64,000 nucleotides of DNA from Vicugna vicugna (Eukaryota). The DNA lies in contig MU059403.1 in assembly GCA_013265495.1 (NCBI GenBank), positions 1,502,960-1,566,959 on the forward strand, read 5' to 3'. Under the pieces are notes generated by a model. That model saw only the letters and a program-made list of their open reading frames with translations. It made no database searches and was not told the origin of the DNA. Of this stretch, positions 48,907-60,400 are shown piece after piece. Positions within the stretch are counted from its first letter, which is position 1; each line of letters begins with the position of its first letter. The translations under genes were made by a program, and so were the position numbers.

Positions 48907-48990
48907 ATGCTGCTCCCCCAGCTCTGCTGGCTGCCGCTGCTGGCCGGGCTGCTCCCGCCGGCGCCCGCGCAGAAGTTCTCGGCGCTCACG
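48907..48990 (+). CDS. SMOC2: SMOC2 (SPARC-related modular calcium-binding protein 2) first coding exon: signal peptide plus N-terminus of the mature protein; the rest of the gene lies beyond the window
   Basis: ATG in Kozak context (gtcaccATG). The 84 nt translate to MLLPQLCWLPLLAGLLPPAPAQKFSALT, matching the human SMOC2 N-terminus as I recall it (MLLPQLCWLPLLAGLLPPVPAQKFSALT) except V19A. A phase-0 donor ACG|GTGAGT follows at 48991. The exon lies in a CpG island. Confidence 0.97.
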
Positions 48991-54200: not shown

Positions 54201-57200
54201 ACAGGTTTTCTTTTTCTTTTTTTGGGGGGTGGTAAGCCAGCTCCTAACATTTGAGGTCACTGGCAGGGCCTTCCAATGGTAACGAAGTTCCAGAAAGCGC
54301 GCGGGGCTTGGCTGACGCCACGGTCTGCGCTGCGTTGGATCCCTGGTCCGAGCGCCCTGGGGTAGACAGTGTGGCTGTTAGGCCAACCTCGTTTTGGATG
54401 GTCTCAAATTGGTTGGATTGTAGTCTCTTCTTAAAGATCAAGTTCGTCAGTTGTTTGGTCCACCAAAAAGGCCAAAAAACCGCTCTCGTCTCGGGGTTGA
54501 CATTGCTCGAGGCAGGTTGTTTTTTTTCCTTTTACTCCGTTCGGGACAATCAAGGCCCCGGAAGCGAGCAGTCCAGGCACGAGGCGCGTGAGTCGCTGCG
54601 GGTCTCCGTCTTGGGCTTAAGGAGCTCTGTGCACCTGCCCCGGCCTTAGCTGCCCTGGTCTGTCCCGTACCAGCCCCGGTGGATGGAAAAGCCAGGCATT
54701 TCCCTCGCGGGCCCGAGGCGTCCTGCTGTGCCGGCGGGGCTGCGGCTGCCAAGGTGAACGCATCTGAGAGACAGACACTGGGCTGGACCAGGAGGACCCC
54801 CCAGGGCCCTTCCCCCTCCTCCCTCTGCGGGAAAGCCACAGAGGAGGCACTGCCAGCCCTGGGGCCTCGGGGGCCTTGGGGAAGACCTGTCCTGGCTCTT
54901 GTGTGACCCTGCTCCTGCCGGGAGCTCCCTTTCTGTGCTTCTAGGAAAAGTGCATCAGAAATGTGTCCCCAGCACCCTGAGGAAGGACGGAACAGCACCT
55001 CGCCGCGTGGGTAGACGGGTGATTTTCATTTCTCAGCTCGAGGATGGTGATATTTGGGACGACCTTGGCCACCTCTCTCTCTTTCCAGCTCTGAGCAGGT
55101 GGGTGTGGTGACTCCGACTCTGAACCCCCGTGTTCAGGGCTCTACACGGGATGACCCTTGTCCCTCTGTGCGCACGGGGACCACTTTTGCGCGCGCCTTC
55201 CGAAGACCTGAGCCTGGACTTGCATCTGGTCGCCCGTTTCTTGTGCCTGACGTGACTAGCTCAGGGCGGGCTAATCTCTCTGCACACGACCTGCAGCCCC
55301 GCGGCCTCACTTTACCCCTCTTTCCTAGCTCTTCTGATGACGTTGAGAAAATCTGCAAATCCAGAGACCCTCCTGGTGCTGCCTCACTTCCTCACTGGTG
55401 CCCTCCCTGATTAGACATCAAATTCAGACAGAGAGACGTCATCACACGCAGTCACCCCACTGATGAGAAGAACCACTTTCAAATATGGAAAAGAAATGAT
55501 AAAAAATAAATTCCACTTATGCTTATAATTCTAAAAGCAATTCCAAAGATCTGAATGAAGGTAACAGCGAACTGAGTGCCGCGTTTGTCTTCAGTCTTCT
55601 GCTGATTCATTCCATGGAGGACTTGGGTCTGTGTAATCAAGAATTTAAAAAAAAGCAAAACAAAACAGTACATTTAAAATTAATTAAAAAACTGACCTTT
55701 GACAAACAGAAGTTACCGTCCTGCCGTGGGTGGGGCTGCAGGGGTAAGATGCCGTGGGGCTGGCGACTGGTGCTTTGGAATCTCAGGGCCAGGTTTGGGG
55801 CTGGGGTCCAGGCGGTGCGCTGGGGAAAGCGCCACCGCGGCATCCTCTCTGTGAAGCGCCGTCAGCCTCACACGGCCTGTGGCGGACGGCCAGCCTTCCC
55901 TCCCACCTCCTCAGGGATCAGCCACTGACACGTCACCACGCCTGTTCTGAGGGACTGTCTCAGCCTTCACAGCGAAGCAGCTGAGTCAGGACAGACAGAC
56001 GGACGGACAGTGCCCTGCCAAGTCCCCATTGTCTCCACCACTGGTCAGGACCCCCTCTCCAGGCGGCTCCCCACTTCCCACCAGTCACATCAGACACGCG
56101 GGAGCTGCCGTCCAGGCCACCTCGCTCCTTCACTGGACGTGCTGGTGTCAGAGACGGGGGAGGAGGGTCCCCTTCTCCCGTGGGACCAAACTGATCATCA
56201 CACCAGGGCCCTCGCCACACAGAGTCTAGGCCGGGGGGTCCTTGGTCTTTGGAAAATAGATACACGTGCAGTTTTAACCAATAAAAAGAGAGAGAAAGCG
56301 AGCCTTTTGGGGCCCGGCACTAACGCTCTCGACTGCGGGACAAGACCTGCCGTCAGGAGGGCTCTTCCTGGGAGGGACGCTGTCGGCCGGAGCCCTGGGA
56401 CGACGTCGGGGCTCATGCCGGCTGAGACGCGTGCGAACTTTAACAATTCCATCCACTCATGAGTCCACAGAATTTACATCATCTGTTTTCCATGGGCCAT
56501 TTATTTAGGTTTTTCAAAATGATCACTATGTCGTGGAAGGTCAGACCCCCTTCCTGACTCTTCCTGTCCAGACCCTTTGCTCCCAGGCTCAGGTTCTGTC
56601 TCCCAGGGTCCAGAGGACTCAGAAGACGAGATGAGGTGTGGACGTCAGCGCGCCGCGCACCCACCTGTGCCTGCCCCCCCCCCCGCCCCAGTCTGAGGAG
56701 CCACCGCAGCCCACGCCTCCCCTTCCCTTTCTGCCCCAGGCTCCACCTTGAGCTCTGGGTGGTCCTCACTCTTCCACGAGCCTGGCCCAGGGACCAGACG
56801 CAGGATCTCAGAAGCAGCCGGTCACTGAACAGCAGGGTGCAACCTTGCCCGATGGCACTGGTGTGTGGTGGTCCCACTTTCCCAAGTCACTTTCTGAATC
56901 AGAGATTCTATTAAGCCTGTTTCCCCATCATTGGTTCTTGGAATTTTTGAGCCCATAAGTGGAGTTTTATATGATCGTCCTGTTAAAACCAGATTTGCAT
57001 CCTGACCCTGTTACCCAGATTGGGACTGTCCCCTCTGGCTTATGTCAGTCTCCAAGCATTCCTCCTTCTTCTTGTAAATGGCTTGGCCTCAGGTCACCTG
57101 AGGGCTGGGCTGGGACTCACTCCCAGGAGGTGAGACCCAGGGCCATTTCCATCTGCTGCGTGGATTCATTGCCCCAGGAAAAAGCCCCAGGAGATATGCG

Positions 57201-57370
57201 CCCCCGCCCTGCATGAATCAATGACTTAAAAACCATCAGACACTAACCTGGACTCCCAGGTACAGCCCACTGTGACTCTAAGCCAGTCACTGTCGCTGTG
57301 TGAGTGCTCACGACAGTCTGTTTGGCACCCGGTTCAGCGCCCTGTGCGAGCTGCCGTCTCTGGATACAGG

Positions 57371-57424
57371 GACGTGCTCACACCGCTACCTAGGTGAGCA
57401 CCTAGGTAGCGGTGTGAGCACGTC
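57371..57424. repeat. Perfect inverted repeat: 26-bp arms, 2-nt spacer
   Basis: gacgtgctcacaccgctacctaggtg (57371-57396), AG, then cacctaggtagcggtgtgagcacgtc (57399-57424), the exact reverse complement. Confidence 0.99.
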
Positions 57425-60400
57425 GGCACTGGGGTCGAGACGTCTGCGCACCCAGCAAACTCTCCTCACCCTGCCCCTTCCTCTCTGAAAGTAGGGAGTG
57501 CCAGCCTTCTGCACTGGGAGCAGCCCTGCCAGCAGCTGTGCTCATTTCGTGGGTGTATGTATTTTAGACTTTTGTCAACACCTCGGGGTAAGGAAAGTGA
57601 GTAACAGCCCTGGCCTGAACCTACATGTCTAAGCCCTGGCTTCTCCGGATCCACAGATAATGTGCTCGCGCTAATCAGTTCTTCATTCTTAAAAGATTTA
57701 TCTCTTGGAGGGAGCTGCCAAAGATAGATCCTTCCTTTCCCTCGGAGATATAATCCGGGTGGAGCCACCAACCCCTTCTCTGCACGCCTGGCGTCCGTCC
57801 CGCGTTTTTCACCCGGCTCAGAACACAGGTGCGCGCTGGCGGCGGCAGCGCCCACCCTGCGGGGAAGCGTCGGTGCGACGGTTCCCGCATCGACCACGCG
57901 GGGGGGCCCGAGAGCAGCCCGGCTCGGCGGGGCGGGGGCGGGGGCGGGGGTCCCAACGCAAAGCTCCTGCCACTGGGCCACTCCAAGACCCCACGGGGCC
58001 TGCTTAGCACGAGTTCGGGCGCCCACTCAACTCTCCAGGCTTAAGGGTTTGACTCAGGATGCAGGGACACTACGGGAGGGAGTGAACACCCAGGGACGCG
58101 TTTCTGTGACTTTCTAGCAACTTTGGAGTCTGGGATGAGCAGGTTAAGCTCAGTGCCATCACTCGCATACGGACAACAGAGCTGTGTTCCTGGAGCAGGA
58201 CTCTGGTTTCATGACCCAGGTCAGGAGGGCTGCCCAGTGGGCTGTCTGCCGCCTGCGTTCATTCCTTTCTGCTGCGAGGTCTGGTCCCTGAGTGAGTGGA
58301 TTGCATGTAAAGCAGTGGCCTCGCTTGTCTGTCGGCTAAATCGGCGTTATATTCCAGCATTGTCCTGAGACATGTCGACTTCACGATGAGGATGGCTTTA
58401 ACCTGAAAGGACTGTAACTGCGGGAAGTAAAACCGGGTGCTCAGGCTCTCCAAGCCTCTTCCAAACGAGCATTTCCTCCCGGAAAGTCTGCAAACAAGCT
58501 TTGTGGGAGGAGGACTGGGGCGGGGGAAGGGAGCCACCAGCCCCCTTAGGAGGCTCTCCCTCACCTCTGGCCAGAAATCATTTACATTTCTTTGCATCCA
58601 GAGATCTGAAGGAGGCTCTGGAAAGTCCTGACTGGCCCCATTCAAACCCACACTGCCTTTCCCTCCCCCCGCCCCGCTGCTTTCTGCCCCTGTTCTTTCT
58701 CACCTGGCAAAGGAAAAAGCTGCTGCCATGGCTGCAGGCCCGTCACCGCGCAGACTGATTTCTAAAGATGGGGCAGGGGGGCCACGCCTGCGATCTGAGG
58801 TCCAGTTAGCCAACATGGCCCCTTCAGAGCCTGGTGCTGGTGTCCTGCGTTGAAGAGGGAGACTTGAATAGCCAGCAGGTGACACTTGGTCCGAGGGGCC
58901 GCCTAGTGACCTCGGGGTGGTGGCATCGCCCCTCTGCCCCCAGAGGTCAGTGTGTTGTCAACACACCCTGAACCCTGGTACTCTGAGGTCGTGGTGGCTC
59001 AGGTCTGCATCCTTAGTAGTGGGTGCATGGGCAGTGTCCCCGTGTGTGCTGAGGTCCAGCAGGGCTCCTGGGGGGCGCCCAGAGAGCTGTGTGTGGCCTT
59101 ATGCCTGGGGTGGGGCGGCTTGCAGGCCTGTCTTCTTGGGGGGCTGGCACGTGGCCCTGGGGCTCCGGATCTCTTGCTTCCTTTCTTATCCCACCCCCTA
59201 AATTCAACACAGAAGGAGAAAAGAATTTCCCAGGGGCAGGAATAGTAGAGGTTAATCTGCCTGCCTGTCCCTTTCTCTGTGTGTCTCTCTGTCTCTTCTC
59301 TGTCTCTGTCTCTGTCTTCCTCTCGCCCTTAGGCTTCCTGCAGTCTCGCCCAGTGTGCACGTGGTCACTGCAGCCACCCTCCCGGCTGTGCCCCTGCCTG
59401 GCCACAGGCCCCCAGCCAGGCTGCCCCTCCCCACACCAGGGAGCCCAGGTCTCCAGCTCAGTGCAGGGAGGCTGGGGTGGCCCCAGGACGGGAGCTCAGT
59501 GAACCGAAACATCTGAGAAAGTACATGAACTAGCCTCGAACTTGACTCAAAGCCAAATCCTAACCAGACTTTTTTTTTTAATCACAATTTGTTTTTTCAC
59601 TTTGTCTTCTTTAGTACTTTCTGGGTTTCCCAATTCTATTGAGACTCAGAACAGCCCTCTGTAGGTAGGTAAGCAGAGAGATCCAGGCTCTGAGGACGTG
59701 GCGTCCCTTGTTGTCCTGGGACCCCAAGAGTAGCGGCGCCGGAGGAGCGGGAGGAGCAGGATTCCGGCTGAGTCCTGCAGGGGCGGGGCACCCAGCTGTG
59801 CGGGGGAGGGGCAGGCACCCGGTCCGCCCTGCAGCCCAGCGCTCTGCAGTGTGCTTCGGGGGTCCCCTTAAAACACATCTTGGGTGGCAGAGGGGCTTTG
59901 ATGGAGGAGTGGTAAACAAGGGTGCGGTGAAATGTGCAGATAAAATCATGGCGGGGCCTCACCGCTTGCCTGGACTGCTCCGGGCAGTGGCAGGGCTTCC
60001 TTGAGGGACCTGGCATCTCAGCTGGGTGCCCGTCGCTGGCTTACGGCCATGATGGCTGGTCGCTGTCCAGCCATCACGTGTCCTGTTATCCTGCACACAC
60101 AGCAGTGGACAGGGGGCTGGGGAGGGGTCTCCAGATGTTGCTGTTGGAAATGCAGCCCAGAAGGTGGCTGTCAGCTGAGCCCTGAGGGGCTGGGAGGCAG
60201 CTGGGTGGGAGGGGCTGGGAGCATCCTGGGCAGAAAGCCACTCACCAGATAGTGGGGGCCTCATTAGGGGCTCTGGAAGGATGCAGGGAGTCAGGGGAGC
60301 AGGAAGGGCCCCGAGGAGGTGGGCTGGGCAGCCGGGGGAGCCTCCCAGGGGGTCAGAGCAGAGGTGCAGGCAGACTCCTGAGGCGGTCCTGATGCTGAGG

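What the first reader, a model, noticed from the sequence alone, without database searches (positions are those of the whole stretch)
57371..57424. Perfect 54-bp palindrome in SMOC2 intron 1, with a template-switch signature
Seen: 26-bp arms that are exact reverse complements around a 2-nt spacer, in complex unique sequence and not in any repeat I recognise; chance is negligible. GTGAGCAC occurs both at the centre (57394-57401) and in the right arm (57414-57421). Removing the 20 nt at 57402-57421 leaves an 11-bp inverted repeat (gacgtgctcac/gtgagcacgtc) around a 12-nt loop, and the removed piece is the reverse complement of that loop plus GTGAGCAC. Inference: a replication template switch built a perfect hairpin in one step, a proposed route for de novo microRNA birth. 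It would be transcribed in SMOC2 pre-mRNA as a ~26-bp dsRNA stem (candidate lineage-specific miRNA/siRNA precursor or ADAR substrate) and could extrude as a DNA cruciform. Zero mismatches imply a young or actively homogenised structure.
Basis: partly seen in the sequence, partly recalled or inferred. Interest (0 to 1): 0.75.

Follow-up and report, generated by a model that had tools for sequence, protein, structure and literature searches.

The report
Young template-switch palindrome in SMOC2 intron
A perfect 54-letter DNA palindrome in the first intron of SMOC2 is real and was most likely made in one step, when a copying enzyme briefly read the wrong strand and stretched an older 11-letter hairpin; this kind of mutation is already known, and nothing shows that the palindrome has a function.

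Summary
Positions 57371-57424 form a 26+2+26 perfect palindrome, and the next-best hairpin in the 64 kb has 11-bp arms. It is not an assembly artefact: its 31-mers occur in at least 16 DNA runs from 8 studies and three organism labels (a fourth on the wider 1-kb query), and an independent contig spans it with no differences.

A relative about 3.6% diverged lacks exactly 20 nt. It carries an 11-bp stem with a 12-nt loop. The extra piece is 57382-57401 (start ambiguous over 57379-57382), not 57402-57421. That piece is the exact reverse complement of the relative's sequence across the insertion point. In 200,000 random palindromes, the same-geometry deletion reproduced this twice, so an insertion here is favoured over a deletion in the relative.

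This is a template-switch expansion of an inverted repeat, a known class of mutation.

The functional ideas have no support. The stem is 25-26 bp with a 4-nt loop, which is not pri-miRNA geometry. Rfam gives only sub-threshold generic hairpin hits. No RNA data exist for the species that carries the palindrome.

One individual appears heterozygous for loss of exactly the 4-nt loop (57396-57399). Polarity rests on a single outgroup.

The parts
57371..57396 (.). Left arm of the palindrome (26 nt)
   Evidence: 100% complementary to 57399-57424
57397..57398 (.). Asymmetric 2-nt centre (AG). It is templated, being the complement of CT at 57377-57378.
   Evidence: The centre 8-mer at 57394-57401 is the reverse complement of 57374-57381.
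57399..57424 (.). Right arm of the palindrome (26 nt)
57382..57401 (.). The 20 nt absent from the relative, taken to be the product of the template switch. The start can be placed anywhere from 57379 to 57382 because of a CAC microhomology.
   Evidence: One search reports '20 left out at 57379' in the X17 contig. One search finds four equivalent placements, each an exact reverse complement of the short allele across the junction.
57374..57381 (.). Left half of the older stem (GTGCTCAC; with 57371-57373 it makes 11 bp). It is part of the source that was copied.
   Evidence: Present in the relative
57402..57413 (.). The older 12-nt loop, kept in place. Its inverted copy is 57382-57393.
   Evidence: The relative has this loop directly after the left stem.
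57414..57424 (.). Right half of the older 11-bp stem. It offers 11 nt of complementarity for the first jump.
   Evidence: Present in the relative
57396..57399 (.). The 4-nt hairpin loop (GAGC), apparently deleted on one allele of sample X14
   Evidence: The folds put the loop here. The pattern of contig breaks in X14 is reproduced only by a heterozygous 4-nt deletion in a k=31 graph simulation.
48907..48990 (+). SMOC2 exon 1 coding part (signal peptide), given as context for the intron assignment
   Evidence: ORF translation. The gene identity rests on my own knowledge of the human protein's N-terminus, not on a database hit.

Best explanation
This is a recent, lineage-specific, probably neutral mutation. 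It is a single template-switch event that expanded an existing short inverted repeat into a perfect palindrome.

The older allele, still seen in a related species, read: 11-nt left stem, 12-nt loop, 11-nt right stem.

Inferred steps:
1. A nascent strand that had just copied the left stem, with its 3' end at 57381, left its template.
2. It paired through up to 11 nt with the right-stem sequence on a strand of its own sense (sister or opposite parental strand).
3. It copied the loop and then 8 nt of the left stem backwards, producing 57382-57401.
4. It returned to the original template at the start of the loop, using the terminal CAC (6 of 8 nt pair).

The result is a 26+2+26 palindrome. In either replication direction, the copied source includes sequence lying ahead of the nascent end. 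The switch was therefore between strands, not a fold-back of the nascent strand on itself.

In SMOC2 pre-mRNA the site would form a 25-bp stem with a 4-nt loop. Nothing indicates that this stem is processed or used.

A second, later change, loss of exactly the 4-nt loop, seems to segregate in the species. It is inferred to reflect processing of a DNA hairpin or cruciform tip.
For: The palindrome is real and widespread. Its words are held at a share of 1.00 by at least 16 DNA runs of organisms A, B and F from 8 studies, and by organism C on the 1-kb query. A 1262-nt contig from an independent sample (X4) spans 56674-57910 with 0 differences.

The short allele exists. A 2123-nt contig in X17 is 90-95% alike, with 54 substitutions over 1489 nt. 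It shows 20 nt left out at 57379, C>T at 57373 and a C inserted after 57423. No such second copy exists in the DNA runs of organism A, so this contig comes from an orthologue in another species, not from a paralogue.

The signature is that of a template switch. The extra 20 nt are the exact reverse complement of the short allele's 20-mer spanning the junction. The inverted match extends to 32 nt at 100% identity.

Polarity favours insertion. Among 200,000 random perfect palindromes given the same deletion, the deleted piece was an inverted copy of the remainder only 2 times, or 2 of 3251 when the 3-nt microhomology was required. A slippage deletion would also be expected to use the 8-nt direct repeats and leave the opposite loop orientation, which is not what is seen.

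The event meets published criteria for template-switch mutations: inverted fragment of at least 15 nt, at least 80% identity, at least 5 differences explained (PMC10710096). It parallels yeast inverted-repeat expansions from 7 to 25 bp and 9 to 24 bp by interstrand switching (PMC13100816).
Against: Only one outgroup allele was available, so polarity rests on the signature argument and on parsimony, not on a tree. The outgroup sequence comes from assembler contigs of an RNA library, and its letters in this stretch were rebuilt from a table of differences. Replication-fork switching cannot be told apart from template switching during break repair. Absence of function is argued from geometry and from lack of evidence, because no small-RNA or RNA-seq data from the carrier species were examined.
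Confidence: 0.8

Rival explanations
1. The palindrome is older than the species split, and the relative lost 20 nt by a palindrome-stimulated deletion at the 3-nt CAC repeat.
For: Perfect palindromes are prone to deletion. The indel is flanked by a 3-nt microhomology. There is only one outgroup. With about 1.8% change per lineage, roughly a quarter to a third of 52-nt arm pairs would still be mismatch-free.
Against: The deleted piece would then be an exact inverted copy of the remaining sequence across the junction only by chance. That includes the asymmetric centre. It happened 2 times in 200,000 simulations, or 2 in 3251 given the microhomology. This rival also needs two events instead of one. 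Slippage would favour the 8-nt direct repeats 20 nt apart, which would leave the other loop orientation.
Confidence: 0.05
2. The template switch happened during double-strand-break repair, as templated insertion by an error-prone polymerase in end joining, rather than at a replication fork.
For: The same sequence signature is expected: an inverted templated insertion with short microhomologies of 11 nt and 3 nt. Nothing in the data identifies replication.
Against: No flanking deletion or untemplated letters mark the junctions. The literature on such clean inverted-repeat expansions attributes them to replication (PMC10710096, PMC13100816).
Confidence: 0.12
3. The new hairpin is a functional RNA element: a lineage-specific miRNA or siRNA precursor, or an ADAR target within SMOC2 pre-mRNA.
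For: The site is on the sense strand of an intron. The RNA hairpin is very stable, at -54 kcal/mol for 74 nt against -21.9 for the short allele. Template-switch hairpins in introns have given rise to miRNAs in primates (PMC10710096).
Against: The stem is 25-26 bp with a 4-nt loop, and the flanks branch rather than extend the stem. pri-miRNAs prefer about 35 bp and a loop of at least 10 nt (PMC10710096). The stem is below the 30-55 nt class that paper calls miRNA-like. Rfam gives no hit at threshold. The best hit reaches 31 bits against a cut-off of 69, scores about the same on both strands and belongs to a plant family, so it reflects generic hairpin shape only. No listed RNA run of the carrier species holds the site.
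Confidence: 0.05
4. It is an assembly or sequencing artefact (fold-back chimera), or a copy of a transposon with terminal inverted repeats.
For: Palindromes are classic sites of chimeric reads.
Against: The palindrome is held by many independent runs and studies. It is spanned by an independent contig with unique flanks on both sides. There is no other copy in the window. The orthologue in a relative has the same flanks and the short form.
Confidence: 0.01

Closest known systems
Template-switch mutations (four-point model of Loytynoja and Goldman, PMC5453318; hairpin-creating events in PMC8794818 and PMC10710096)
   Same: An inverted copy of adjacent sequence is inserted in one event, giving a perfectly paired stem. 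The site is intronic and lineage-specific. It meets their thresholds for fragment length, identity and differences explained.
   Different: The new stem (26 bp) is shorter than their 'miRNA-like' class (30-55 nt). The event extends an existing 11-bp stem rather than creating one from unstructured sequence. Polarity here rests on one outgroup, not on a reconstructed tree.
Inverted-repeat expansion by interstrand template switching in yeast promoters (ERT1 7 to 25 bp, GRE2 9 to 24 bp; PMC13100816); quasipalindrome correction (Ripley 1982; Lovett)
   Same: A short perfect inverted repeat serves as the pairing site, and the arms grow to about 25 bp by copying the spacer. The switch must be between strands.
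   Different: This case is in a mammalian intron, not a promoter, and no effect on expression is known. The spacer is copied in, and the original is kept rather than simply inverted.
Unstable palindromes revised at their centre (center-break mechanism, Cunningham et al. 2003, cited in PMC3300023 and PMC7680136)
   Same: The apparent second allele differs only at the axis of symmetry, where hairpin or cruciform tips are cut.
   Different: Those cases involve much longer palindromes and asymmetric, stabilising deletions. Here the loss is exactly the 4-nt loop and leaves a spacer-less 50-bp palindrome. The mechanism is inferred, not shown.
Canonical animal pri-miRNA hairpins
   Same: It is an intronic, sense-strand stem-loop.
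   Different: The stem is too short, the loop too small and there is no lower stem. It matches no known family and no small-RNA evidence exists.

Membership tests
Template-switch mutation (TSM) | Inverted fragment of at least 15 nt, at least 80% identical to a nearby source in the parent allele | tested here: met
   A 20-nt insert, extendable to 32 nt, is 100% identical to the reverse complement of the relative's allele. The thresholds are from PMC10710096.
Template-switch mutation (TSM) | Explains at least 5 differences better than a forward alignment | tested here: met
   It accounts for all 20 inserted letters, and possibly for C/T at 57373.
Template-switch mutation (TSM) | Not within a simple repeat or repeat family | tested here: met
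   There is no other copy in the window and no low-complexity sequence. No genome-wide repeat library was available.
Template-switch mutation (TSM) | Direction of change fixed by parent, sister and outgroup nodes | tested here: inconclusive
   Only one outgroup allele was found. The direction was argued from the signature simulation instead. Attempts to find more outgroups failed.
Canonical pri-miRNA | Stem of about 35 bp with a single-stranded base | tested here: not met
   The continuous stem is 25-26 bp, and the flanks form a branch rather than a lower stem.
Canonical pri-miRNA | Apical loop of 10 nt or more | tested here: not met
   The loop is 4 nt.
Canonical pri-miRNA | Match to a described miRNA family | tested here: not met
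   Rfam gave 0 hits at gathering score. The best sub-threshold hit reached 31.4 bits against a cut-off of 69 and scored about the same on both strands.
Canonical pri-miRNA | Reads of about 22 nt with fixed ends from the arms | not testable with these tools
   The run index uses 31-letter words, so small-RNA runs cannot be found with it.
Transposon with terminal inverted repeats (MITE) | Several dispersed copies with target-site duplications | tested here: not met
   There is a single copy in the 64 kb, and the short allele in the relative shows in-place growth. A genome-wide copy number was not measured.
Structure-prone unstable palindrome | Sequence changes centred on the axis of symmetry in natural populations | tested here: inconclusive
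   The X14 contig pattern fits only a heterozygous 4-nt central deletion, and the depths add up: 5.8 plus about 4.4 against 10.7 in the flank. However, 31-mers cannot link the two flanks across the variant, and no reads were seen.

The most novel reading that the evidence does not exclude
The locus may show a palindrome both being born and being revised. One interstrand template switch made it. An exact deletion of the 4-nt loop now segregates, possibly in about a fifth of sampled animals: 4 of 20 holders have a word share of 0.86. That would mean a 54-bp GC-rich palindrome folds into a hairpin or cruciform in the mammalian germline and is trimmed at its tip. The three allelic states (34, 54 and 50 nt) would form a natural series for testing whether a newborn perfect hairpin in a pre-mRNA is diced or edited.
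Probability: 0.25. Interest if true: 0.55.

Novelty: new member of a known kind. Interest (0 to 1): 0.35.

Why it matters
This is a clean natural example of a one-step template-switch expansion of an inverted repeat in a mammal. Both the 'before' allele (in a relative) and the 'after' allele (widespread in the carrier species) were observed, and both switch points sit in identifiable microhomologies. Such events are the proposed raw material for new hairpin RNAs, and they are a source of structure-prone DNA. Thousands are already catalogued in primates, so the case illustrates the model rather than changing it. The possible loop-deletion polymorphism is the only part that could add something new.

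Tried and rejected
- I tried to reach orthologous loci through spurious ORFs. A 186-aa ORF beside the palindrome found no homologues in the protein collection, so that route failed.
- Two scans of metagenome contigs for host carry-over found nothing. One used a pattern that fits both alleles and the other used a conserved left flank.
- Organism D (X33) looked like a possible outgroup because it held none of the words. It turned out to be nearly identical to the window, with low depth and a hole over 57259-57433, so it is uninformative.
- An intrastrand fold-back version of the switch was rejected by reasoning. In both replication directions the copied source includes sequence ahead of the nascent end.
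- Earlier notes of this scan held nothing on this place or on this kind of event.
- The center-break paper itself (PMC262683) is not held, so it is cited only through other papers.

Full report
**1. What is there**

Positions 57371-57396 and 57399-57424 are 26-nt arms that are exact reverse complements around the two letters AG. The arm has no other match in the window at up to three mismatches, and none appeared in 100 dinucleotide shuffles. The next-longest perfect hairpin with a spacer of 20 nt or less in the whole 64 kb has 11-bp arms. A sensitive self-comparison of 57150-57650 against the window finds no repeat family. The 8-mer GTGAGCAC stands both at the centre (57394-57401) and in the right arm (57414-57421), and its complement stands at 57374-57381.

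**2. Context**

An ORF starting at 48907 on the + strand opens with a signal peptide that I recognise from memory as the N-terminus of SMOC2. It runs into a GT donor after 28 codons. This identification is my own knowledge, not a database result. No Kazal-like coding segment lies between 49000 and 64000. The palindrome is therefore about 8.4 kb into intron 1, on the sense strand. The window is GC-rich throughout. The palindrome itself is 61% G+C, with four CpGs.

**3. Is it real?**

The 31-letter words covering 57341-57454 are held at a share of 1.00 by 16 DNA runs of organisms coded A, B and F from eight studies. The 1-kb query is fully held by a run of organism C as well. A 1262-nt contig from a sample not flagged as the assembly source (X4) spans 56674-57910 with no difference and no gap. 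An assembly or fold-back artefact is excluded.

**4. The outgroup**

One RNA library (X17) contains a 2123-nt contig that matches 56400-57888 at 90-95%, with 54 substitutions and 52 gap letters over 1489 nt.

- The DNA runs of organism A show no second copy of that kind at a likeness threshold of 80. The contig is therefore the orthologue in another, related species, not a paralogue.
- Inside the palindrome it differs in three ways: C>T at 57373, 20 letters left out at 57379, and one C inserted after 57423.
- Rebuilding the stretch from these differences gives an 11-nt left stem, the 12-nt segment that is 57402-57413 in the window, and an 11-nt right stem. This is a modest hairpin of -21.9 kcal/mol in 54 nt, against -54.0 kcal/mol in 74 nt for the window's form.

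**5. Geometry**

Exactly 20 nt are missing, but the loop kept by the relative is the right-arm version. The extra piece is therefore 57382-57401, and its start can slide to 57379 because CAC occurs on both sides. The asymmetric centre AG is what distinguishes the two mirror versions.

**6. Signature and direction**

In every equivalent placement, the extra 20 nt are the exact reverse complement of a 20-mer of the short allele that spans the insertion point: 8 nt of left stem plus the 12-nt loop. The inverted match runs on to 32 nt at 100% identity. Three arguments favour an insertion in this lineage.

- If a perfect palindrome were ancestral and the relative had deleted 20 nt, this relation would hold only by accident. 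In 200,000 random perfect palindromes given the same deletion it held twice. Among the 3251 that also had the 3-nt microhomology it held twice.
- A slippage deletion would be expected to use the 8-nt direct repeats that lie 20 nt apart. That would leave the opposite loop orientation, which is not what the relative shows.
- An insertion needs one event, whereas a deletion history needs two.

I therefore read the change as an insertion in the window's lineage. With a single outgroup this remains an argument, not a tree-based result.

**7. Mechanism (inferred)**

1. A nascent strand ending at 57381 can pair through 11 nt with the right stem (57414-57424) on a strand of its own sense.
2. Copying backwards from there yields first the inverted loop (57382-57393) and then the inverted left stem (57394-57401).
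3. The new 3' end then pairs with the original template through its terminal CAC (6 of 8 positions), and synthesis resumes at the loop (57402).

This explains the palindrome, the repeated 8-mer and the templated but asymmetric centre in one event. In either replication direction the source includes letters ahead of the nascent end, so the switch must have been between strands.

The event satisfies the criteria used for template-switch mutations in primates: at least 15 nt, at least 80% identity and at least 5 differences explained (PMC10710096). It closely resembles the inverted-repeat expansions from 7 to 25 bp and from 9 to 24 bp described in yeast (PMC13100816). Sequence alone cannot say whether the switch occurred at a fork or during break repair.

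**8. Age**

The palindrome is absent from a species about 3.6% diverged over this stretch. It is present in all close samples and labels examined. Zero mismatches between the arms fits a recent origin but is weak evidence on its own. About one substitution would be expected in 52 nt over the full branch. No homogenising process needs to be invoked.

**9. Function**

There is no evidence for any function.

- As RNA the site forms 25 pairs closed by a 4-nt loop. The flanks fold into a side branch rather than a lower stem.
- pri-miRNAs prefer a stem of about 35 bp and a loop of 10 nt or more (PMC10710096). That paper's 'miRNA-like' class requires a stem of 30-55 nt.
- Rfam gives nothing at gathering scores for the whole window. 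A permissive search returns only generic hairpin matches at less than half the cut-off, about equal on both strands and led by plant families.
- No listed RNA run of the carrier species holds the site.
- The X17 contigs show that the relative's intron 1 is present in an RNA library at even depth. This could be pre-mRNA or DNA carry-over.
- From general knowledge, a 25-26-bp duplex is at the low end for ADAR editing and below the length usually quoted for PKR activation.
- Cruciform extrusion is physically possible: -33.6 kcal/mol as single-stranded DNA, z = -10.6. It was not tested.
- Palindromes over 50 bp are not rare in mammalian genomes. A human catalogue that allows up to four mismatch pairs lists about 70,000, mostly AT-rich (PMC7680136).

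**10. A second allele**

In sample X14 (organism A) the contigs stop at 57395 and restart at 57400. The pieces laid across the gap are:

- a 64-nt piece (57366-57429, no differences, depth 5.8);
- two 35-nt pieces, each sharing 30 letters with one side plus five letters that do not fit (depths 5.0 and 3.8).

I simulated the k=31 graph for seven models. Only a heterozygous deletion of 57396-57399 reproduces these exact boundaries and lengths. The two paths add up to the flank depth of 10.7. The deleted letters are precisely the hairpin loop, and the result would be a spacer-less 50-bp palindrome.

Three other runs (X30, X32 of organism A; X31 of organism F) miss one of the seven sampled words, as X14 does. 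They may carry the same variant. I could not inspect reads, and 31-mers cannot link the two flanks across the variant, so this is a well-fitting inference only. Because the four centre letters are themselves templated by the switch, the 54-nt form is the primary product and the 50-nt form is secondary.

**11. Verdict**

The template-switch origin is supported, with corrected geometry. The functional readings are unsupported. The palindrome is a new example of a known kind of mutation, of modest interest. The possible loop-deletion polymorphism deserves a PCR check.

Noticed in passing
57396-57399: Sample X14 of the carrier species appears heterozygous for loss of exactly the four loop letters, giving a 50-bp palindrome with no spacer. 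Three more runs miss one of seven sampled words in the same way.
   Followed up: partly
57324-57334: There is a cluster of differences between the window and the relative: a GGG indel after 57326 plus four substitutions within 9 nt. The window's 57324-57331 is the reverse complement of the relative's 8-mer at the same place. This may be a second, smaller template switch about 40 nt upstream.
   Followed up: partly
57292-57314: This segment carries GTGCTCAC once more (57306-57313) and resembles the right arm (13-nt matches at 85%, families D6 and I6). It may be a trace of earlier hairpin turnover, or chance.
   Followed up: no
57874-58007: This CpG-rich stretch has runs of G separated by single C (about 57929-57951) and looks G-quadruplex-like. 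The contigs of all four runs laid break or thin out here. It lies about 450 nt downstream of the palindrome and could be a replication obstacle.
   Followed up: no
56400-58400: An RNA library labelled as a reproductive-system metagenome holds contigs of more than 2 kb of the relative's SMOC2 intron 1 at even depth (about 22-25). Intronic pre-mRNA and DNA carry-over cannot be told apart.
   Followed up: no
57257-57277 and 56675-56696: Contigs from elsewhere in the genome (in X14 and X33) share two 21-22-nt matches with these places, joined by 19 other letters. This is probably a short dispersed motif.
   Followed up: no
57265-57305: From memory only, this stretch resembles the core of a MIR-type SINE. 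No repeat library was available to test it.
   Followed up: no
   Followed up: no
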